The notes under the pieces were generated by a model, which searched no databases, was not told the DNA's origin, and saw nothing but the letters and a program-made list of their open reading frames with translations. From sequence record KJ019103.1: 64,000 bases of DNA. One strand, 5' to 3'. This document shows, in pieces, positions 2 to 63,413 of this stretch. Numbering within the stretch: position 1 is the first letter of the stretch; each line of letters begins with the position of its first letter. The position numbers and the translations under genes were made by a program.

Positions 2-3000
2 GTTGCTATTCCAGTCAGTGGTAACCCTATAACCCTCAAGGGTAAGACAGTGTATCAGAGTGATGCAGAGGACGTGTTTGGTGCCATCTCAGAGATTGAG
101 ACATTTACTAGAGATAACAAATTATATTACAGAATCTACTTCTTTGTTAGTAATGATGAAATTGCTAATGAGAGAAAACTATTCACTATCCCTGGTAGAT
201 CAAGAACACAGAGAGGATGGAATCAGGGTGACACTACAATCACTGTAGATACTACTCTTGGGTTTAGGGATAACAATGAGTTTATCACTGAAGATGGAAC
301 TAAGTTTACATACTTGGAGAGAACTGTTAATCAGTTCCTAGGTGTTGAATGTAGTGATACAGAGAAAACACTAGGTACTAATGAAGATATCATTGATGAT
401 ATTACTATCTTTGGTATTAATGATGATGGTGAGACTGTCTCACTACGTATGACTGGTGTTATCTCTGATATTGAGTTCCCCGATGAAGTCCCATTCACTA
501 CACCTGGGGAGAAGATATCTGTAGATACCTTAGGTGAGAATATCATCTCTGCTGATGTAACTAGAAGTGAGCCTACACAGAGACAGATCATTGCTAATAG
601 TTTCATCTATAACACTTCAGTAAGAATGGAAGTAGATGAACTCAATGGTTCTGATTTCCAAATCAATACTGCCTACTTAGATAAAGCTTTCATTTCTCCT
701 GGTGACTCTGTTGATATTCTCCAAAGAGGCTCGCAGCTTGTCTATGTCGCTAATCGCAAAGTAACCTCAGTTGACTATCTCAATAGTATTATAACAATCA
801 ATGACTCATTTGGCATCCCTTTAGATCAATCACTTGATATCAGAAGGAATCAGAACTATGCAAAGAGTAGCACTACAGATATTGAGTATGGTCAGAACTC
901 TGTTCTATCCAATGTTCTGAACCTTTATGATGCAACAGAGTTTGATGGTAACTTCTATGTTGCAACTAACTCCCTACCTTCCTATGATATGGAAGTTAAA
1001 GTTGTTGAGAGTATCCTCACTGGAATCACTACTTCTAACTTTGAAGGATATAACTCATTCACTGATCAGTATTCAACAATTATCTTTGATTCTGCCACTT
1101 CATTCATAACTGGTGATCTAATTTCATATAGAGTTATCTCAGTAGAAAGAACAGGTATTCCCCTTATCACTGAAGGTGAATACTTTGTAGAGGTTCTCAG
1201 CAACCCCAGAAAGATTAAACTATATGTATCACCTTCCTTCATTGGAAGTGATAACTTTGTTGGATTCGTATATAACGATGCAGTAGGTGCTCATGCCTTC
1301 ACTCTAGAGGAACAGAAAGATAGAAGAATCAATACTAAGAATGTATTCAAGAAGATTCCCTTCACAGCAACCAAACAGAATATCACTATCCCTAGAACAC
1401 CCGATGTAACCCCCTCAGGTTCCCCTGTGGCAGTTCTTACTAATGGTGTAGAGGTATTGTCATATAAGTCACCAGATAAGGTGTTCTTGGGTCCTTTAGA
1501 AGAAGTTGTTCCTGTTGCTTCTGGTGAGGGTTATAGTGTTATTGGACCACCCAATATCCTAATCACACCACCTAATATTCAAGTTACAGATCCAACTGGT
1601 ATTCCTACTGATGGTGGTGTTGCTAGAGTATCACCAGTTATCTCTGGTAGGTTGAAGAAGATCTATATCGATCCACAAGACTTTGATATTGAGGAAGTAT
1701 TCTCAATCACTGTTGTTGGTGGTAACAGTCGTGGTGCCACAGCAAAACCACAGATTTCTAAGAGAACTCGTTCTATCCCCTTTGATACGAGACTTGATAT
1801 CTACGGTGGTGGTATTAATCCAAATGAAGAGACCATCCTATTCTTAACTGAACACAAACTCGCCAAGGGTGATGCAATTATCTACGAAAACAACGATACA
1901 CAAAGTATTGGTGTTAATGTTGCTGGTGGTAGTAACATCTATAATGGCCAGACACTATCTAACGGTGCTGTGTATTTTGCAGAACCCCTTAATAATGTAA
2001 CCATTAAGATCTATGAGACTCTAGAAGATTTGAACTTGGGTATCAATACCGTTGGGTTCACTTCAAGTCAAACTGGGTTTGGTGTTCAGGACTTTACTAC
2101 TATTCCTAGAAACCAACTCACTGGTGCTTCCATCACAGATGATGGTGGTGAGTTTGTATATCGTAAGATGGAGTTCCAACCAGAGAACATCTATCCTGAG
2201 TATGATGAGTTGAGATACGACGGTCATGGTTTTGCTAGTGGTGATCTAGTTGAGTATGGAACTTTCGGTTCTGTTGTTGGTGGTCTATCTACTGAGAAGC
2301 AATACTATGTTGATGCTTTAGATGAAAATATCATCAAACTATCTGATGCCGGTATTGGTGGAACAAGTAGGTTTGACTATGATAGGAAGGACTATGTTGA
2401 TTTCACCAACATTGGTGTTGGAACACAGTTTATCAAGTATCCTGATGTCACTGTCAATGTTGTAGTATCCTATGCCTCGTCTATCACTGGTATCATTACA
2501 GCAACACCTATTATCCGCGGTGGTATTATTCAAACTTATGTTGAGACTGGAGGATACTATGGTTCTGATATTCTCAACTTCGCCAAGACACCAGAAGTAA
2601 CAGTTCAGACTGGTGAAGGTGCTAGAATCAAACCAGTTATTGTTAATGGTAAGGTTACCACAGTTCAGATTCTAAGTAAGGGTATCAACTACCCACCCAC
2701 ACCAGATCTTCGTGTTATTGATAAGTCTCGTAAAGGTGCTGGTGCTCTTCTTCGCCCAGTAGTTATTGATGGTGCTATCCAGAGTGTTGTTGTTATTAGC
2801 ACTGGTGAAAACTATGATCCATTGAATACTGATATTACAGTAATTGATACTGCTAGACGATGTATTCTTGTTCCTAGAATTACACCTCTCACAGTTAATA
2901 CCTTTGCTAGATTTGGATTCGAAGGTCTATCTAATAATGACTACTCGGTTGTTGCCTATGACAGAAAGATTCGTGAGGATGTATATGGTGACCTAGGTGC

Positions 3001-6000
3001 TTCCCACTCACCCATCATTGGTTGGGCAAACGATGGTAACCCCATCTATGGTGGTTTTGGTTTCGATGATCCAGAGAACTCCAGTTCTGGTTTCCGGGCG
3101 ATGAGAACTTCCTATGAACTCTTCCCTGGTGAGATCTATGGTCGTCCCCCACTAACACTATATCCTGCTGGTTCTTTTGTTGAGGACTACAAGTTTACAG
3201 ATAATGGTGATCTAGACATCTATAATGGTAGGTATGGTAGAACTCCTGAGTACCCTAATGGTGTGTATGCATACTTCGCTGGTATCTCCACTGATACTCA
3301 GTCACTAGCAAGAGAACCACAATTCCCTTACTTCATTGGTCCTGAGTTTAGGGATGGATTGGGTATTCAAGATAATACTGTATCCCAAGATTTTGATATT
3401 AATAATAAGGATATTTTCCGTAATACTTTCCCATATGCCGTAGGTAACCCTATTATCGGCAGTGAGTTCCTAGATCAATCATACTTAGAGGATACTCAGG
3501 ATTCTATTATACAATCTATCAATAATGGTACTGTTGATAACTTAACCATCGTTGGTGCTGGTGTTAGTTACTCTGTTGGTGATATTGTTAATTTTGATGA
3601 TACTTTCGACTACATTAGTGTAGTTGTAGATCAGGTAGATGGTCCCGAGGTAACACAGATTCAAACTCTCATCAAGAGTTATGGTAAAGCAGAAACCAAA
3701 GTCATTAAAGTTGATAACACAACTGTTCGTGTTTATGTTGATCCCTTCCACGAGTATCTTGATGGAGATAAAGTTGTAATTAGTGGTCTATCAACAAACA
3801 CAGATCAACTCAACGGGACTCATGAGATTAACTTCATGAGGGAGCAAATGACAATGTTTGCTCCTATTCCTCCTACTTTGTTTGAGACAGTATCTGATAT
3901 CTTTGTCAATACTATTTCAGATAAGGTTTCTGTTGGTTCTAGTATTACTGTTGGTCTTGGCACTCTATCGGAGGATATGGAAGTTATCAACATCTTCCCT
4001 ATTAATAAGGCACTTCGGGTTAAGAGACCAGTAGGTTATGGTTTCACACACCCAATTGGTGATGCTGTTAACATTGCTCCTAATTACTTTGATATTAAGA
4101 AGAATGTAGATTCATTCCCGTCTGAGATTGATGTTGAGTACTACTTCAACCCACACCAAACAGTGGCAGTTGGATTGGAGACTGGTGTAAGTGTTGGTTT
4201 GGTGTATTCAATTGGTACTATCGATAAGAATATCTCAGTACAGACTCAAAGAATATATGCACCATCCCATGGTTTCAGAACTGGTGAGGAGATTACTTTT
4301 GAGAAGAATGATACTGATACTGCATTAGTTGTAACAGACGGTAGTACTGTATATACACTACCTGGTGTAGGTAATACAAGTAACGCATATGTTGTATCAC
4401 TATCCAAGAACTATATTGGTATTAGAACAGTAACAGATGGTCCTGATCTATTCTTCTCTACTGATGGTTCCGATTCTCCTCTATATTCTATTAAGACTAA
4501 TCGTTTCGCTGAGACTGCATTAGTAGATAGAATTCAGGCAGAAGTTAAAACGAAAACGGATCATAGGTTGGGGAATGACGATCAGATATTTACTGATGTT
4601 ATTTCTTCTGGAAAATCAGGTGTAGGTACTAACCCCAACATCAAACTTGAGTTCGATGATTCATCACAATCACTTATTGTAGATCCATACTTCACACAAC
4701 CTAGTGATATTGATACGGTTAATAACCTAATTAATATCAATAACCACGGTTATACTAATGGGGATATTGTTCTATATCAAAACTATGGAAGTTCTATTGG
4801 TGGTTTAACAACTCATCACAAATATTACACTATTCCCTTTGATAGGGATAAGTTCTATGTTGCTGAAACATTTGTTGATGTAAGACCCGGAACTAAACTA
4901 CCTGTGAATCTAACTTCTGTTGGTATTGGTTCCCATAAGTTCTCCAAGGTCAATCCACCACTACTCATCACTAATAATAATGATATTGAGTTTGATGTGT
5001 CATCACCAACTCTATTTGGTAAAACACTAGAATTCTTCTTTGATCGGACTCTAACTGAAATATTTGATAATAACAGTATAGACAATGTATTTGTTGTTTC
5101 TGGTGTATCTACTGAGGGATACGAGGATGCTAGGAAGTCTATTAGATACTCTGATAACAATCCAGATGTATTCTTCTATGGTATTACTGAAGGTGGTTAT
5201 ATTTCCACTGCAGATACTGAAGTATCTAGAAACAACTCTATTAGATATGAGGCAAGTGAGTACGCAATTGAAGGTAGAGTAACCGTTATAGACGATAGCA
5301 CCTTTACCTATACACTCAATACTATTCCCGAGAAGCCACTATACACTAATCCTGATACACAACTCTCATACAAGACTTCCTCTAGTACTGCTCTAGGTGG
5401 TGTTGGTAGATTGAATATCATCTTCAGTGGTAATAACTTCCCAGCTCTACCTGAGTTTGAGGGTATTCAAACTGAGTATGGGCAGAACGCAACTATCAGA
5501 GCAGAGTCTGATGATATTGGAACACTTGCTTCCTTCAGAATCCAGAACGCTGGTTGGGATTACTCCGCTGATAATACACTTCGCCCCTTTGGTGTTATTC
5601 AACCAACCATTAGATTTGATAATAGTGACTTTGTTACTGAGGTTACTGTTCTTGATGGTGGTAATGGATATCAGAACCCCCCTAATGCTGTTCTAGTAGA
5701 CTCTGTAACAAGAGAAGTAGTAGATAATGGATCTATCATCCTAGAGGTACAATCATCCACCATCACAGATGTTATTGTTGAGGTTGCTCCTTCTGGTTTA
5801 TCCAAGGATCTCCAAGAACTATGGACTGTCAATAATAGTAATGGTATTCCTATCCTACTAATTGGTAACATTGATAATGTTGCTGGTGTAGTTACATATA
5901 CAGTACAGACTCCTATTGAGGGTTATGCAACACCACCATTCTCAGTTGGTGATAGAGTATTTGTTGAGAATATTCTAGTAGATCAAGATGCTCCCCCCTC

Positions 6001-58305: not shown

Positions 58306-58692
58306 ATGAACAATGATTATGATAGGGAACTTCCTTCCCCAACCGGATCTACGGGGGCAGTTGAACTAATGATTGAATCTATTGACCAGATGAGCAACAA
58401 TGATCCAGTAGTAAAACTAGTTCTACTGAAGAATAATGAAACTATTATTGCTGAGGTTCGTGAGAGTATCGATGGAAGTAGTGTTCAGCTCATTGACCCT
58501 CGTGTAGTTCTACTACAGGCAGCAAGACCATCTGATGACGGACAGACCACAACAACTGCCATCTCATATACCGACTGGTTACCTTTGTCTGAGAGTAGAA
58601 ACTTCACTATTGATGGTGATTATGTGGTCCTTATCACTGATCCCATTGAAAGTTTAGTACAAAGTTATACACAGGCACGACAAAATGGATGA
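58306..58692 (+). CDS. Sm-like-fold hypothetical protein
   Basis: 128 aa; VKLVLLKNNETIIAEV...LIDP...WLPLS. Confidence 0.7.
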   Translation: MNNDYDRELPSPTGSTGAVELMIESIDQMSNNDPVVKLVLLKNNETIIAEVRESIDGSSVQLIDPRVVLLQAARPSDDGQTTTTAISYTDWLPLSESRNFTIDGDYVVLITDPIESLVQSYTQARQNG

Positions 58693-58966
58693 AACTATTA
58701 GAGTATTGGTCTTGACCAATGGAAAAGTCCTTATCAGTAAGATCGAAGAGATAGGAGGTGCTGATATCGGGGAGCCAGACTGCCGTCTAACCGACCCAGT
58801 ATGGTATAATGATGAGGTGGAGGAAATGACTGAAGGGTTCAAACGCTTTCCTGGTAAGGGGATCACACCCGATACCAAGTTGGCCATCTCTTCTGTCAAT
58901 ATCTTGACTCTGGTTACCCCAGATAATAAACTCCTCAGTGAATACCTCGTGTTTATTAGTGATTAA
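58685..58966 (+). CDS. Sm-like-fold hypothetical protein
   Basis: 93 aa; LISKIEE...DIGEPDC.L.DP. Confidence 0.7.
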   Translation: MDETIRVLVLTNGKVLISKIEEIGGADIGEPDCRLTDPVWYNDEVEEMTEGFKRFPGKGITPDTKLAISSVNILTLVTPDNKLLSEYLVFISD

Positions 58967-60441
58967 TGTCTAACAAGTTCTACACCAATGTTCAGCTTTA
59001 TGGTAACAACATCCTCCTACGCGGGTATGAGAACGGAGAGAAGTTTCACACTAGGGAACAATACTCTCCCACACTATATGTGAGTTCTAAGAAACCTAGT
59101 GAGTGGAAAACACTTACTGGTGAGAATGTTCAACCAGTGAAACCCGGATCTATTAGAGATTGTAGGGATTTTATCAAGAAGTATAAAGATGTAGAGAACT
59201 TTAATGTGTTTGGTAATGAGAGGTTTGCCTTTCAATACATTGCAGACAACTATCCTGGGGAGATTGAATATGATCCTCAGTTGATTAATATCTTGAGTTT
59301 GGATATTGAGGTTGAGTCTGAACATGGTTTCCCAGATCCAGAGTCTGCTAATGAGGAAGTACTACTCATTACTATTCAGGACTATGTTACCAAACAAATC
59401 ATTACTTGGGGTCAGATAAAGCATGGGGAGTTTGATAACCAACAGGATAATGTAGATTTCCGTCCATGTGAGAGTGAGTATCACCTACTGAGTGCCTTTA
59501 TTCAGTGGTGGCAACAGAACCCACCTGATGTTATCACTGGGTGGAACATTGACTATTATGATATTCCATACCTCGTCAGACGCATGAAGAGAGTGTTGGG
59601 GGATAAACTAGCAAGCACTATCTCCCCTTGGAAGTTCGTAACAGATGAAGAGCACTTCTTCAAAGGTATGAACAAACTATACTACAATATCGCTGGTATC
59701 ACCCAACTAGACTACCTAGTTTTATACACTAAGTTCACATATACGAACCAAGAGTCATACAGACTAGACCACATTGCTAATGTGGAGTTGGGTCAGCAGA
59801 AGTTAGACCACTCTGAGTTTGAAACTTTCAAAGACTTCTACCGAAAAGGTTGGCAGAAGTTCGTAGAATATAACATCGTTGACGTGGAACTGGTTGACAG
59901 GATGGAAGAGAAGTTGAAACTCATTGACCTTGCCATCACTATGGCGTTTGATGCCAAGGTTAACTTCCAGGATGTATTCTCACAGGTGAGACTATGGGAT
60001 ACTATTATCTATAACTATCTCAGGGATAGGAACATTGTTATCCCTCAGAAGGAACAGACTAGTAAGAGTGAGAAGTTCGCTGGAGCATATGTAAAAGAAC
60101 CCAAACCCGGTCTATATGAATGGGTGGTGTCCTTTGACCTTAACTCCCTGTATCCTCACCTACTAATGCAATACAACATCTCTCCAGAAACATTGATGGA
60201 AGAGAGGTGTCCTAATATCTCCATTGAAAAGGTTCTCAATGAAGAAGTAACCTTTGAGATGTATAAAGACTATGCTGTTTGTCCTAATGGGGCAATGTAT
60301 CGCAAAGATGTCCGCGGGTTCCTACCAACCCTAATGGAAAAGATGTATGATGAACGAAAGGCGTTCAAACAAAAGATGTTGAAGTCCAAACAAATCCTCG
60401 TTGATATCGAGGCTGAAATGAAAAGAAGAGGTGTATTATGA
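58966..60441 (+). CDS. gp43: DNA polymerase gp43, N-terminal half (gp43A)
   Basis: Exo I LDIEVE, Exo II GWNIDYYD, Exo III YNIVDV and motif A SFDLNSLYPH; ends after ERKAFKQKML. Confidence 0.95.
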   Translation: MSNKFYTNVQLYGNNILLRGYENGEKFHTREQYSPTLYVSSKKPSEWKTLTGENVQPVKPGSIRDCRDFIKKYKDVENFNVFGNERFAFQYIADNYPGEIEYDPQLINILSLDIEVESEHGFPDPESANEEVLLITIQDYVTKQIITWGQIKHGEFDNQQDNVDFRPCESEYHLLSAFIQWWQQNPPDVITGWNIDYYDIPYLVRRMKRVLGDKLASTISPWKFVTDEEHFFKGMNKLYYNIAGITQLDYLVLYTKFTYTNQESYRLDHIANVELGQQKLDHSEFETFKDFYRKGWQKFVEYNIVDVELVDRMEEKLKLIDLAITMAFDAKVNFQDVFSQVRLWDTIIYNYLRDRNIVIPQKEQTSKSEKFAGAYVKEPKPGLYEWVVSFDLNSLYPHLLMQYNISPETLMEERCPNISIEKVLNEEVTFEMYKDYAVCPNGAMYRKDVRGFLPTLMEKMYDERKAFKQKMLKSKQILVDIEAEMKRRGVL

Positions 60442-60596
60442 GTTTTCGTCACAAAACATATGGTGGTCTAGTTCATTATGACCACAATGATAAGATTATA
60501 GTCATTGAACGTCGATTGAATCCAATGCAACATCACGCTATGCTTGTGAGTAAGTTGAAGGAAGAGTATCCAGAGTATCAAGTAGTTACTGGATAG
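60438..60596 (+). CDS. 52-aa hypothetical protein (not in the ORF track)
   Basis: ATGA-coupled to the gp43A stop; MSFRHKTYGGLVHYDHNDKIIVIERRLNPMQHHAMLVSKLKEEYPEYQVVTG. Confidence 0.55.
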   Translation: MSFRHKTYGGLVHYDHNDKIIVIERRLNPMQHHAMLVSKLKEEYPEYQVVTG

Positions 60597-60811
60597 TGAG
60601 TGGTTTAGTTGCTGAGATTATGCAAGTCGTTACTATGATTACTATGCTATTCAATATGTGCAATAGTAATGAGTTCAACAGACAAGCATGTATGAAAGAC
60701 TGGGATACTTGGTTATTACCTGAGATATCCCGTGCGTGGCAAATTAAAACAGGTCAGGAAGCCCCTTACCAAAACGAGGAAGATGTGGTAGAATGGCACC
60801 AACAGCAGTGA
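60596..60811 (+). CDS. Small hypothetical protein
   Basis: 71 aa (or from ATG 60620); overlaps the upstream stop; its TGA overlaps the GAGGT SD of gp43B. Confidence 0.6.
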   Translation: MSGLVAEIMQVVTMITMLFNMCNSNEFNRQACMKDWDTWLLPEISRAWQIKTGQEAPYQNEEDVVEWHQQQ

Positions 60812-60818
60812 GGTTCTT

Positions 60819-61982
60819 ATTGGTTATCTTATCGGTGGAGACTCTGAGGAGAAGCAGGAGGAGATCGTTCAGTCGGATAGTGACTATTCCAAACTATCTG
60901 ATAAACAACTGATCTATCTACGTGGGCAAACTATTAAAGATATTGCTAAGTTTTATAATTTTCAACAAGTAAGGAAAATTACTCTAAACTCCGCTTATGG
61001 TGCTTTGGGTAACCAATACTTTAGATACTATAAACTGGCGAACGCAGAGGCAGTGACCTTCTCTGGTCAGTTAAGTATCCGTTGGATTGAGAATAAGATG
61101 AATGGATTCATCAATGAGATTCTAAAAACAGAGGGTAAGGATTATGTGATCGCCTCTGATACTGACTCTATCTACATTAACTTTGGTGATGTGGTAGATA
61201 AGTTCTTGAAGAAGTTTGATGGTGATAAGGAGAAGACTGTATCAATGGTAGATAAGATCTGTAAGGATCAACTAGAACCATTCATTGATAAGTGTTATGC
61301 CCATTTGGGTGAGTATGTGAATGCATACGAACAGAAGATGCAGATGAAGAGAGAGAATATTGCAGACAGGGGTATCTGGACAGCGAAGAAGAGATATATC
61401 CTGAATGTATGGGATAGTGAGGGTGTTCGTTATGAGGAACCCAAACTGAAGATGATGGGTATCGAAGCAGTGAAGTCCTCTACACCTGCTCCTTGTAGAA
61501 CTATGATTAAGGATGCTCTCCGTATTATCATTGAGAAATCTGAGGATGAAGTTATTGACTACATTGATGATTGTAGGAAGAAGTTCAAACAGATGACACC
61601 AGAGGAGATTGCGTTTCCTCGTTCCGTTAGTGATATGATCAAGTTCCGTTCTGGGACAACAATATATGCTAAGAGTACTCCTATGCATGTGAGGGGAGCG
61701 TTACTATTCAATCATCACATTAAGAAGGGTGGGTTGGAGAACAAGTATTCTCTCATCAATAGTGGTGAGAAGATCAAGTTCTGCTACCTCAAGATTCCTA
61801 ATCTAATTGGTGAGAATGTTATCTCATTCATCTCCGACTTTCCTAGGGAACTTAAGTTGGAGAAGTATGTTGATTATGATACCCAATTCAATAAAGCATT
61901 CCTAGATCCACTCAAGATCATCTTGGATGCTATTGGTTGGAACTGTGAGAAGCAGATGTCCTTGGAGTCATTTTTCACCTGA
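60819..61982 (+). CDS. gp43: DNA polymerase gp43, C-terminal half (gp43B), proposed ATT start
   Basis: Frame open from 60792; motif B RKITLNSAYG lies upstream of the track start 61005; motif C IASDTDS; KKRY; C-terminal SLESFF clamp-binding motif. The start position is inferred. Confidence 0.85.
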   Translation: MGYLIGGDSEEKQEEIVQSDSDYSKLSDKQLIYLRGQTIKDIAKFYNFQQVRKITLNSAYGALGNQYFRYYKLANAEAVTFSGQLSIRWIENKMNGFINEILKTEGKDYVIASDTDSIYINFGDVVDKFLKKFDGDKEKTVSMVDKICKDQLEPFIDKCYAHLGEYVNAYEQKMQMKRENIADRGIWTAKKRYILNVWDSEGVRYEEPKLKMMGIEAVKSSTPAPCRTMIKDALRIIIEKSEDEVIDYIDDCRKKFKQMTPEEIAFPRSVSDMIKFRSGTTIYAKSTPMHVRGALLFNHHIKKGGLENKYSLINSGEKIKFCYLKIPNLIGENVISFISDFPRELKLEKYVDYDTQFNKAFLDPLKIILDAIGWNCEKQMSLESFFT

Positions 61983-62010
61983 TATATAAAACCCCCAGAG
62001 GAGATCGCCA

Positions 62011-62169
62011 ATGGAAAAACAAAATCTAGCGATGGATCTATTCATCGAGTCTGTAATCAAACCAGACAGTGACCTTAGGGGTCAAGCATCAGAACAGGGT
62101 TGTCTAGAAGAACTATTGCAAATCCGTGATGATGTGATAAAATATCTTTATAACGAGAGGAAAAACTAG
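62011..62169 (+). CDS. 52-aa hypothetical protein (not in the ORF track)
   Basis: SD GAGGAG upstream; MEKQNLAMDLFIESVIKPDSDLRGQASEQGCLEELLQIRDDVIKYLYNERKN. Confidence 0.6.
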   Translation: MEKQNLAMDLFIESVIKPDSDLRGQASEQGCLEELLQIRDDVIKYLYNERKN

Positions 62170-62172
62170 TTT

Positions 62173-62406
62173 ATGGCGTTATCCCAATCAGTGGAGAATT
62201 CCCTCAGGGAGGCAAGTTCGTCCCTGAGGAATGCTCTAGCTTTTGCTGCCAGACAGGAGAGATCACATACCTGTCAGCATATTGCTAAAGTATTAAACGA
62301 TATTGATCTTATTCAGAGAACGGATGAGATGTTTGATACCCTTGATAGTATCAAGGATGGTAAGGGTGGTAGCAACCCATTTGGTAAATTTGGTTTTGAT
62401 GAATAA
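62173..62406 (+). CDS. Hypothetical protein
   Basis: 77-aa helical ORF coupled to uvsX. Confidence 0.65.
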   Translation: MALSQSVENSLREASSSLRNALAFAARQERSHTCQHIAKVLNDIDLIQRTDEMFDTLDSIKDGKGGSNPFGKFGFDE

Positions 62407-63413
62407 TGGATTTCTTAAAGGATATTGTAAATGAAATTGGTGGCGACTTCACTCAGATTGCCTCAGAGATTGAAGAAAACGAAACATACGTGGACACTGG
62501 TTCGTTCATCTTTAATGCTCTTGTATCTGGGTCTATCTATGGTGGTGTATCTGGTAACAAGATTACTGCAATTGCTGGGGAAAGTTCTACTGGAAAGACT
62601 TTCTTCTCACTCGCCGTGGTCAAGAACTTCTTGGATACTAATCCCGATGCATATTGCCTTTATTTTGATACTGAAGCTGCAATCAATAGAAACCTTCTTG
62701 AGTCACGAGGTATTGACCTTAAGCGGTTGGTTGTCGTCAATGTCGTTACAGTAGAAGAGTTTAGGATGAAGGCACTTAAGTGTGTCGATATCTACCAGAA
62801 GAAACCAGAAGACGAACGCAAACCTTGTATGTTTGTCCTAGATTCTCTGGGTATGTTGTCTACAGAGAAAGAGATCAATGATGCTCTGAATGACAAGAAC
62901 GTTCGTGATATGACTAAATCACAACTCATCAAGGGGGCGTTCAGGATGTTGACCTTGAAACTAGGTCAGGCTAAGATACCAATGATTGTTACTAACCATA
63001 CCTATGATGTGATTGGTGCCTATGTTCCTACTAAGGAAATGGGTGGTGGTTCAGGTCTTAAGTATGCCGCCTCTACTATTATTCACCTCACTAAGAAGAA
63101 AGAGAAAGACGGTAAGGATGTTATTGGTAACATTATCAAGTGTAAGACTGCTAAGTCCAGACTCTCCAAAGAGAATACAGACGTAGGTGTTAGACTATTC
63201 TATGATGAACGGGGTTTGGATAAGTACTATGGTCTCCTAGAACTTGGTGAGCTTGGTGGTATGTGGAAGAATGTAGCTGGTCGTTATGACTTGGGTGATG
63301 GTAAGAAGATCTACGCTAAAGAGATACTAAAGGATCCAGAGAAGTACTTCACCGAAGAAGTTATGGAGAAACTGGATGTTGTTGCTAGGGGAACATTCTC
63401 ATATGGGTCATAA
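62406..63413 (+). CDS. uvsX: RecA-like recombinase UvsX
   Basis: AIAGESSTGKT, YFDTE, FVLDSLGML, NHTY, MGGG.GLKYAAS. Confidence 0.96.
   Translation: MDFLKDIVNEIGGDFTQIASEIEENETYVDTGSFIFNALVSGSIYGGVSGNKITAIAGESSTGKTFFSLAVVKNFLDTNPDAYCLYFDTEAAINRNLLESRGIDLKRLVVVNVVTVEEFRMKALKCVDIYQKKPEDERKPCMFVLDSLGMLSTEKEINDALNDKNVRDMTKSQLIKGAFRMLTLKLGQAKIPMIVTNHTYDVIGAYVPTKEMGGGSGLKYAASTIIHLTKKKEKDGKDVIGNIIKCKTAKSRLSKENTDVGVRLFYDERGLDKYYGLLELGELGGMWKNVAGRYDLGDGKKIYAKEILKDPEKYFTEEVMEKLDVVARGTFSYGS

What the first reader, a model, noticed from the sequence alone, without database searches (positions are those of the whole stretch)
58966..61982. DNA polymerase split at the fingers domain into two separate genes
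gp43A (491 aa: exonuclease plus motif A) stops after the first fingers helix, with a tail QILVDIEAEMKRRGVL. gp43B resumes 377 nt later with an extra acidic/helical leader before motif B. Two coupled small ORFs fill the gap and I see no intron core or intein signature, so the enzyme is probably a heterodimer (about 878 aa in total), perhaps joined through the added helices. Split gp43 at this position is known from some Aeromonas/Acinetobacter T4-like phages; its extent in cyanophages should be checked.
Basis: partly seen in the sequence, partly recalled or inferred. Interest (0 to 1): 0.65.

Follow-up and report, generated by a model that had tools for sequence, protein, structure and literature searches.

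The report
Split cyanophage DNA polymerase gene
This marine cyanophage encodes its essential T4-type DNA polymerase as two genes cut at the tip of the fingers domain, a kind of split already known in other T4-like phages; here two small genes sit in the cut and the second half has no normal start codon.

Summary
The window is Synechococcus phage ACG-2014f (Atlauavirus). gp43A (58966-60441, 491 aa) stops after the first fingers helix. ORF1 and ORF2 follow with overlapping stop/start codons. The gp43B frame resumes at 60819.

The split is real and not an intron, intein or mis-assembly.
- 45 GenBank isolates share it.
- Twelve uncultured cyanophage contigs have the same tail and leader with the 43A stop overlapping the 43B ATG (TAATG).
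- Rfam finds no intron and the insert folds no better than shuffles.
- Both halves evolve under strong purifying selection.

The cut maps to about RB69 residue 509, the finger tip, as in Aeromonas 44RR and Acinetobacter split gp43.

Added here:
1. Split genes are scattered on a tree of the polymerase body, and one clade is rejected (AU p 7e-6). The fingertip state has therefore been exchanged by recombination.
2. The junction collects insertions: an HNH gene, a GIY-YIG gene, or the ORF1/ORF2 cassette. Makaravirus phages (S-H34 group) carry an ORF2 relative there.
3. In this phage gp43B has ATT where relatives have ATG. GenBank starts it at TTG 61005, inside motif B, which is almost certainly wrong.

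Heterodimer assembly is inferred, not shown. This is a new member of a known kind.

The parts
58966..60441 (+). gene 43A: N-terminal domain, 3'-5' exonuclease, motif A (FDLNSLYPH) and first fingers helix; 491 aa
   Evidence: ORF. Pfam PF03104 and PF00136. T4/RB69 gp43 match at E 4e-79, residues 161-475 to T4 181-490. dN/dS 0.04-0.06 against L096 and L097.
60391..60438 (+). 43A tail QILVDIEAEMKRRGVL: extension of the first fingers helix, present only in split cyanophage alleles
   Evidence: The pattern ..LVDIExEMKRRG.. recurs in the main group of split loci examined; L051 and the Makaravirus phages (S-H34, L118) carry diverged variants. It is absent from 54 intact relatives.
60438..60596 (+). 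ORF1, 52 aa, unknown function; start overlaps the 43A stop (ATGA)
   Evidence: ORF. phrog_3538. Diverged homologs keep the frame in L096, L097 and L099, dN/dS 0.17-0.69. Almost invariant among 11 isolates.
60596..60811 (+). ORF2, 71 aa: small helical protein with a hydrophobic N-terminal helix, phrog_703 family; start overlaps the ORF1 stop (TAGTG)
   Evidence: ORF. phrog_3571 and phrog_703 at 7.9e-9. dN/dS 0.11-0.44. 19 representative clusters in 1.8 billion proteins. AF2 model is a helical hairpin, pLDDT 75. Relatives sit at the g43 junction in S-H34 and L118 and elsewhere in Syn1.
60810..60814 (+). GAGGT: Shine-Dalgarno-like element 4 nt before the ATT, overlapping the ORF2 stop (TGA 60809-60811)
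   Evidence: TGAGGT is conserved in all ATT/ATC lineages, whether or not the TGA ends ORF2. Its function is inferred.
60819..61982 (+). gene 43B: second fingers helix with motif B, palm motif C (DTDS) and thumb; 387 aa if it starts at ATT 60819
   Evidence: Translation. RB69 gp43 match at E 2e-66, residues 25-386 to 532-901. ATT lies exactly where 13 other lineages have ATG. dN/dS 0.04-0.06.
60819..60953 (+). 43B leader (IGYLIGG, an acidic stretch, then the start of the second fingers helix); hypervariable among isolates
   Evidence: 54 variable sites in 60800-60979, against 2 in 60380-60619. Synonymous divergence (pS) is 0.32-0.65 here against 0.13-0.16 in the rest of 43B, with dN/dS 0.05-0.27.
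60975..61013 (+). motif B (KITLNSAYGALGN); the GenBank CDS for 43B of this isolate starts at TTG 61005, inside it
   Evidence: Sequence. Annotation of KJ019103.

Best explanation
The phage's replicative family-B DNA polymerase (T4 gp43 type) is encoded by two cistrons cut in the loop at the tip of the fingers domain, at about RB69 residue 509.

gp43A carries the N-terminal domain, the exonuclease, motif A and the first long fingers helix. gp43B carries the second fingers helix with motif B, the rest of the palm and the thumb. The two polypeptides most likely reassemble into one enzyme. The contacts would be the antiparallel pair of fingers helices, lengthened here to T4 length by the tail and leader, plus the palm contacts. 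This step is inferred from biochemical precedent.

The four genes 43A, ORF1, ORF2 and 43B probably form one translationally coupled operon. ORF1 and ORF2 are real small protein genes that entered an older, directly abutting 43A/43B junction (TAATG).

In this isolate 43B most likely initiates at AUU 60819, helped by the GAGGU element 4 nt upstream and by ribosomes terminating at the ORF2 stop 7 nt upstream. This step is also inferred, at about 0.6.

Across marine cyanomyoviruses the split fingertip has been swapped in and out by recombination. Its junction is a landing site for homing endonuclease genes and small ORFs.
For: Identity: Pfam and PDB matches of both halves.

The split is real and old:
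- 45 isolates share it.
- Twelve IMG/VR loci have overlapping TAATG cistrons with the same tail and leader.
- L096 has the cassette with TAA-ATG and a GAGGAG Shine-Dalgarno sequence.
- S-H34 and L118 have an ATG-initiated 43B.

Both halves are functional: dN/dS is 0.04-0.06.

The leader is translated from the ATT/ATC codon:
- IGYLIGG is kept through many synonymous changes.
- A 1-nt indel just upstream shifts the frame between the ACG-2014f type and the L097 type, so frame conservation begins at that codon.

Same split place as 44RR and Apostate.

Precedent for assembly and activity: phage 25 and 44RR halves co-purify and are active (PMC2988022, citing Petrov 2010). A Pfu polymerase split at the finger tip, made by AUGA coupling, behaves like wild type (PMC3061061).

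Exchange of the fingertip: the split state needs at least 5 changes on the tree of the polymerase body, and one clade is rejected (dlnL 412, AU p 7e-6).

Insertion hot spot: an HNH gene in L021 and a GIY-YIG gene in L051.
Against: - The single-chain 43B model is too poor to read (pLDDT 42).
- 43B has no canonical start in this isolate.
- The GAGG-to-start spacing is short (4-5 nt).
- The RNA evidence consists only of sparse contigs from poly(A)-selected metatranscriptomes, which may hold DNA.
Confidence: 0.85

Rival explanations
1. The 377-380 nt between the halves is a self-splicing intron. For example, the 5' splice site could follow U60439 and the 3' splice site G60813, which would remove the stop codon and fuse 43A to 43B in frame. 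ORF1 and ORF2 would then be intron-borne.
For: - 43B lacks a canonical start.
- The 5' part (60380-60619) and the 3' end of the insert are almost invariant among isolates, and variation begins right after 60814.
- A U...G pair of boundaries that keeps the frame exists (my reading).
- Introns are known in gene 43 of phage 25 and JSE (PMC2993671).
Against: - No Rfam intron match at E<=10.
- The fold energy equals that of shuffles (z 0.10).
- Two ORFs under purifying selection fill the whole insert.
- L096 has the same cassette with a normal TAA-ATG start for 43B, and twelve relatives have no insert yet are still split.
- An RNA-library contig bridges 60813 uninterrupted, and no joint was seen at the boundaries.
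Confidence: 0.03
2. 43B is not initiated on its own. It is made by recoding from ORF2: a +1 frameshift at CAG-UGA-G in this isolate, or read-through of UGA in L097, giving an ORF2-gp43B fusion.
For: - No canonical start.
- In L097, ORF2 and 43B are in the same frame, separated only by TGA.
Against: - The frame relation is not conserved: +1 in ACG-2014f, 0 in L097.
- ORF2 ends earlier in L099 and L110, with two or three in-frame stops before 43B.
- ORF2 and 43B overlap in S-H34.
- There is no slippery site or upstream Shine-Dalgarno sequence of the prfB type.
- A hydrophobic N-terminal extension on the fingers helix seems unlikely to be tolerated (inference).
Confidence: 0.04
3. The gene is broken: a pseudogene in pieces, with replication done by another polymerase, or else an assembly error.
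For: GenBank annotators could not place a consistent start. Four different 43B starts appear among isolates.
Against: - dN/dS is 0.04-0.06 in both halves over pS up to 0.6.
- All catalytic motifs are intact.
- The architecture is the same in 45 isolates and in several metagenome assemblies.
- gp43 is a core gene of T4-like phages (PMC2993671).
Confidence: 0.02

Closest known systems
Bicistronic 'split fingertip' gp43 of Aeromonas phages 44RR2.8t, 25, 31, 65 and Acinetobacter phage 133 and relatives (Petrov et al. 2006, 2010; summarised in PMC2988022 and PMC3061061)
   Same: - The same enzyme is cut at the same place. 43A ends 36-44 aa after the G[FVI][LI]P motif and 43B starts about 50-60 aa before NSxYG.
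- The halves are separate cistrons.
- The junction attracts a freestanding homing endonuclease gene (seg in phage 25, MobE next to 43B in Apostate).
- The halves are reported to co-purify and to be active.
   Different: - The host group differs (marine cyanomyoviruses).
- The polymerase body is only 34-40% identical, and the split alleles are nested among intact cyanophage alleles.
- Most cyanophage examples have overlapping TAATG cistrons rather than an untranslated intercistronic sequence.
- Here the junction holds two small non-nuclease ORFs, and 43B has ATT/ATC instead of ATG.
Engineered split Pfu DNA polymerase (Hansen et al. 2011, PMC3061061)
   Same: A family-B polymerase cut near the finger tip and made from one bicistronic message by termination-reinitiation (AUGA). 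It is fully active and can be reconstituted from separate fragments.
   Different: It is artificial and archaeal, with a short finger tip, and it reinitiates at AUG.
Other homing-endonuclease-associated split genes of T4-like phages: nrdA/mobE in Aeh1 and gene 39/60 with mobA in T4 (PMC2988022)
   Same: An essential replication-related enzyme is split at a site occupied by mobile DNA, and the fragments reassemble.
   Different: The enzymes are different. In the window no nuclease gene is present; nuclease genes occur only in relatives L021 and L051.
Split PolB of Methanothermobacter thermautotrophicus (Kelman 1999, cited in PMC3061061)
   Same: A family-B polymerase made of two polypeptides.
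   Different: It is split in the palm, about 83 residues further on, and its two genes lie 85 kb apart.

Membership tests
T4-type family B DNA polymerase (gp43) | 3'-5' exonuclease domain and polymerase motif A (DxxSLYPS) in the N-terminal part | tested here: met
   PF03104 at 4.7e-25 and PF00136 at 1.1e-19. FDLNSLYPH is present. T4 gp43 match at E 4e-79.
T4-type family B DNA polymerase (gp43) | Motif B (KxxxNSxYG) and motif C (DTDS) followed by the thumb | tested here: met
   KITLNSAYG and ASDTDSIY lie in the 43B frame. RB69 gp43 match at E 2e-66 over residues 532-901.
Bicistronic split-fingertip gp43 (Petrov classification) | A stop codon between the two fingers helices, with both parts otherwise intact | tested here: met
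   The 43A end and 43B start both map to about RB69 residue 509. This is the same place as in 44RR and Apostate.
Bicistronic split-fingertip gp43 (Petrov classification) | A translation start of its own for 43B | tested here: inconclusive
   ATG in 13 related lineages. ATT here and ATT/ATC in all 11 isolates read, with a conserved GAGG upstream. Use of ATT was not tested.
Bicistronic split-fingertip gp43 (Petrov classification) | The two products form one active polymerase | not testable with these tools
The claim rests on precedent in phages 44RR and 25 and in Pfu (PMC2988022, PMC3061061).
Group I / group II self-splicing intron | A conserved catalytic RNA core detectable by covariance model, and structure more stable than chance | tested here: not met
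   No Rfam match at E<=10 in 58500-62500. Fold z-score 0.10.
Intein or split intein | A Hint domain in frame with the host protein, or N- and C-intein halves at the cut | tested here: not met
   Stops occur in all frames across the insert. There are no intein or Hint Pfam hits in 43A, 43B, ORF1 or ORF2. The unmatched tail is only about 16 aa.
Freestanding homing endonuclease gene at the junction | An HNH, GIY-YIG or related nuclease domain in the inserted ORF | tested here: not met
   ORF1 and ORF2 hit only unknown-function PHROGs. By contrast, the insert of L021 hits HNH phrog_374 at 1.4e-56 and that of L051 hits a GIY-YIG homing endonuclease, phrog_314, at 7e-37.

The most novel reading that the evidence does not exclude
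The split fingertip (tail, stop/start and leader) is itself a laterally moving, gene-splitting module of marine cyanomyovirus g43. It would spread or be erased by recombination that homing endonucleases at the junction promote, with the ORF2-family gene as a recurrent passenger. In the cassette lineages an essential polymerase subunit would be initiated at AUU or AUC, perhaps tying its synthesis to upstream translation.
Probability: 0.35. Interest if true: 0.6.

Novelty: new member of a known kind. Interest (0 to 1): 0.42.

Why it matters
- It extends the natural 'split fingertip' PolB from a few Aeromonas and Acinetobacter phages to abundant marine cyanophages: two cultured genera and about a fifth of the nearest uncultured relatives.
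- It shows that the split state is exchanged between lineages and that its junction attracts mobile genes.
- It corrects the public annotation. 43B is truncated or started inconsistently in the 45 ACG-2014f records, in this isolate inside motif B.
- It flags an essential gene that apparently starts at AUU/AUC, which gene callers miss.
- g43 is a marker gene in cyanophage ecology. A 0.4-0.7 kb insertion and a hypervariable leader inside it could affect primers and trees.
- Natural split sites are also useful guides for engineering split polymerases.

Tried and rejected
- **Complex prediction of 43A with 43B:** There is no verdict either way.
- **AlphaFold2 of 43B alone with 14 homologs:** mean pLDDT 42, unusable. 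It gives only a low-confidence hint that residues 28-69 form one long helix.
- **AlphaFold2 of ORF2:** a helical hairpin at pLDDT 75, with no functional lead. I did not run a fold search on so small a helical model.
- **ESM Atlas for ORF1 and ORF2:** no usable hits.
- **Intron reading:** rejected.
- **Recoding from ORF2:** rejected because the frame relation differs between lineages.
- **A phage initiator-like tRNA reading AUU/AUC:** the nearest held genome has only tRNA-Arg(TCT) and tRNA-Asn(GTT), and the window has none.
- **Internal promoter:** consensus promoter and terminator counts are at chance level. The T4 late motif TATAAATA is absent from the locus.
- **RNA runs:** only four metatranscriptomes with small shares, kept as contigs. 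They show no splice but cannot show transcript ends or levels.
- **Petrov 2010 (J Mol Biol):** not held. I used it only through two papers that cite it.
Full report
**What is there.** The window matches Synechococcus phage ACG-2014f isolate Syn7803US44 (KJ019103; Kyanoviridae, Atlauavirus) at 100%.
- An ORF of 491 aa runs 58966..60441 and ends ...QILVDIEAEMKRRGVL*. It has the PolB exonuclease domain and the first part of the polymerase domain. It aligns to T4 gp43 residues 181-490.
- Its stop overlaps the ATG of ORF1 (60438..60596, 52 aa). The ORF1 stop overlaps the GTG of ORF2 (60596..60811, 71 aa).
- The third frame is open from 60792. It reads EVLIGYLIGG, an acidic stretch, then motif B, motif C and the thumb, down to 61982. 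It aligns to RB69 gp43 residues 532-901.

Two points need correcting:
- The codon at 60819 is ATT, and no ATG, GTG or TTG precedes TTG 61005, which lies inside motif B.
- The added tail and leader are 'extra' only against other cyanophages.

**Is it a real split?** Yes.
- All 45 ACG-2014f-type genomes in GenBank have the same four-gene layout.
- Several independent metagenome assemblies have it too.
- Among the 80 closest IMG/VR relatives of gp43A, 16 are split.
  - Twelve of these have no insert at all. The 43A stop overlaps the 43B ATG (TAATG), with the same tail (..LVDIExEMKRRG..) and the same leader (MGYLIGG..).
  - Two carry a nuclease gene in the gap, and two contigs end too early to tell.
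- The 54 intact relatives all have exactly 53 residues between GFLP and LNSAYG. The main split forms have about 43-45 more; S-H34 and L051 have fewer.
- Both halves are under strong purifying selection, with dN/dS 0.04-0.06 at pS up to 0.6.

**Not an intron, intein or recoding site.**
- Rfam finds nothing at E<=10.
- The 406-nt stretch folds no better than shuffles (z 0.10).
- No Hint domain is present.
- ORF1 and ORF2 fill the gap and evolve as proteins. Diverged copies keep the frame, with dN/dS 0.11-0.44 for ORF2 and 0.17-0.69 for ORF1.
- Contig L096 has the same cassette followed by TAA-ATG-GGA-TAC with GAGGAG upstream. There 43B is plainly a cistron of its own.
- In contigs from four metatranscriptomes, one piece bridges 60813 uninterrupted (60731-60970) and another reaches 22 nt past the 43A stop. 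No joint links the two boundaries. These are poly(A)-type libraries kept as contigs, so this is weak support only.
- The frame relation between ORF2 and 43B differs among lineages (+1, 0, separated by several stops, or overlapping). This excludes a conserved frameshift or read-through.

**Where the cut lies.** The end of 43A and the start of 43B both extrapolate to about RB69 residue 509, the tip of the fingers.
- Aeromonas phage 44RR2.8t ends 43A 44 residues after GVLP, and its 43B starts 50 residues before NSLYG.
- Acinetobacter phage Apostate is similar. Its 43B is annotated as 'split DNA polymerase' and lies next to a MobE gene.
- The literature describes these 'bicistronic split fingertip' polymerases. 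The phage 25 halves co-purify and are active (PMC2988022, citing Petrov 2010).
- A Pfu polymerase accidentally split near the finger tip and made by AUGA-coupled translation behaves like wild type (PMC3061061).

From this I infer, but do not show, that 43A and 43B reassemble through the paired fingers helices and the palm.

**How far it extends in cyanophages.**
- In GenBank phages the full leader occurs only in the ACG-2014f group.
- A second cultured group, Makaravirus (S-H34, S-N03, ME01, MA10, MC09), is also split. It has 43A (488 aa), one ORF2-like gene (81 aa), then an ATG-initiated 43B (366 aa) with a shorter leader.
- The S-N03/S-H34 paper does not mention the split. My literature searches found no description of split g43 in cyanophages.
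- I built a tree from the polymerase body with the fingers left out. On it the split state needs at least five changes among 37 rows. Forcing all split rows into one clade costs 412 log-likelihood units (AU p 7e-6).
- The fingertip state has therefore been swapped repeatedly by recombination. The direction of each event is not resolved.

**The junction as an insertion site.**
- L021 carries an HNH endonuclease gene there. It is preceded by a hairpin and a TATAAATA late-promoter-like motif.
- L051 carries a GIY-YIG homing endonuclease gene.
- ACG-2014f, L096 and L099 carry ORF1-ORF2. L097 has a further 69-aa ORF. L118 has a 97-aa ORF plus an ORF2 relative.
- ORF2 belongs to a small family: phrog_703, with 19 representative clusters. 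The family also occurs away from g43, as Syn1_158 after mazG.
- The ORF2 model is a helical hairpin with a hydrophobic first helix. Its function is unknown.

**The start of 43B.**
- All directly abutting alleles and L096 have ATG at the Met of MGYLIGG.
- All 11 ACG-2014f isolates read, plus L097, L099, L106-L113 and the HNH-bearing L021, have ATT or ATC there.
- A GTG two codons upstream exists only in the C7-type isolates.
- GenBank starts the gene at four different places in different isolates.
- IGYLIGG is kept through many synonymous changes.
- A 1-nt indel immediately upstream changes the frame between lineages. Conserved translation therefore begins at the ATT/ATC codon.
- TGAGGT is conserved 3-4 nt upstream, whether or not its TGA ends ORF2.

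I conclude that initiation is probably at AUU/AUC, helped by the GAGGU element and by ribosomes terminating nearby. I put this at about 0.6. A sibling note of this scan (s1-414779) reached the same reading. No unusual tRNA is encoded in the nearest held genome.

**Population pattern.** Among 11 isolates, 60380-60619 (the 43A tail, ORF1 and the start of ORF2) has 2 variable sites in 240 nt. The preceding 360 nt have 41 variable sites. The leader region 60800-60979 has 54 in 180 nt. The leader's synonymous divergence is 0.32-0.65, against 0.13-0.16 in the rest of 43B. This looks like a recently spread or converted cassette lying next to a recombination mosaic. I did not resolve its cause.

**Verdict.** This is a genuine bicistronic fingertip split of gp43. 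It is a new member of a known kind and is already visible in public annotation as two 'DNA polymerase' CDSs, though apparently undescribed. The useful additions are its range and patchy distribution in cyanophages, the insertion hot spot, and the non-canonical start. Interest is moderate.

Noticed in passing
window 61005 (and the homologous 60813, 60828, 60969 in other isolates): GenBank CDSs for 43B begin at four different codons in different ACG-2014f isolates. In this isolate the start is TTG 61005, inside motif B, which drops 62 conserved residues. Metagenome gene callers make the same error, giving products of 309-338 aa.
   Followed up: yes
window 60380-60619 versus 60800-60979: Among 11 isolates the 43A tail, ORF1 and the start of ORF2 are almost invariant (2 sites in 240 nt). 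The 43B leader has 54 variable sites in 180 nt, with synonymous divergence 3-5 times that of the rest of the gene. This looks like a sweep or gene conversion next to a recombination mosaic.
   Followed up: partly
window 60786-60794 (TGGTAGAAT), 24 nt before ATT 60819: A TGnTA[GC]AAT motif, like an extended -10 element, lies 21-24 nt before the 43B start in ACG-2014f, L096, L097, L099, L110 and S-H34, with an xTA xAA T codon pattern. In L118 the spacing is only 6 nt and the TG is missing. It may simply reflect the conserved D-x-L-E end of ORF2.
   Followed up: partly
window 60783-60791: A three-codon mini-ORF, ATG TGG TAG, lies in the 43B frame 27 nt before the ATT. It is invariant in ACG-2014f-type sequences but not conserved in L096, L099 or L110.
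   Followed up: no
L115 (S-H34, NC_070965) 1505-4291; L116 (MC09, PP110486): Makaravirus cyanophages have a split g43 with one ORF2-like gene in the gap, and their genome paper does not mention it. In the MC09 record the product names appear shifted by one gene: 'DNA polymerase' is attached to the 81-aa ORF and to a 139-aa ORF.
   Followed up: partly
L021 4171-4718; L051 4581-5265: Uncultured relatives carry a 153-aa HNH gene or a 234-aa GIY-YIG homing endonuclease gene exactly in the g43 split. The HNH gene is preceded by a hairpin and a TATAAATA motif. L021 also has ATT at the old Met codon and a new GTG five codons upstream.
   Followed up: partly
L019, L012, L086-L088 and 50 other loci: Intact cyanomyovirus gp43 proteins have a fingers domain about 40-45 residues shorter than T4/RB69, with a constant 53 aa between GFLP and LNSAYG. 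Only the split alleles have T4-length fingers.
   Followed up: partly
L117 (Syn1, GU071105) 2908-3105: An ORF2-family gene (Syn1_158, 'T4-like GC 931') sits after mazG, outside g43. The family is therefore a movable small cyanophage gene and is not tied to the polymerase.
   Followed up: no
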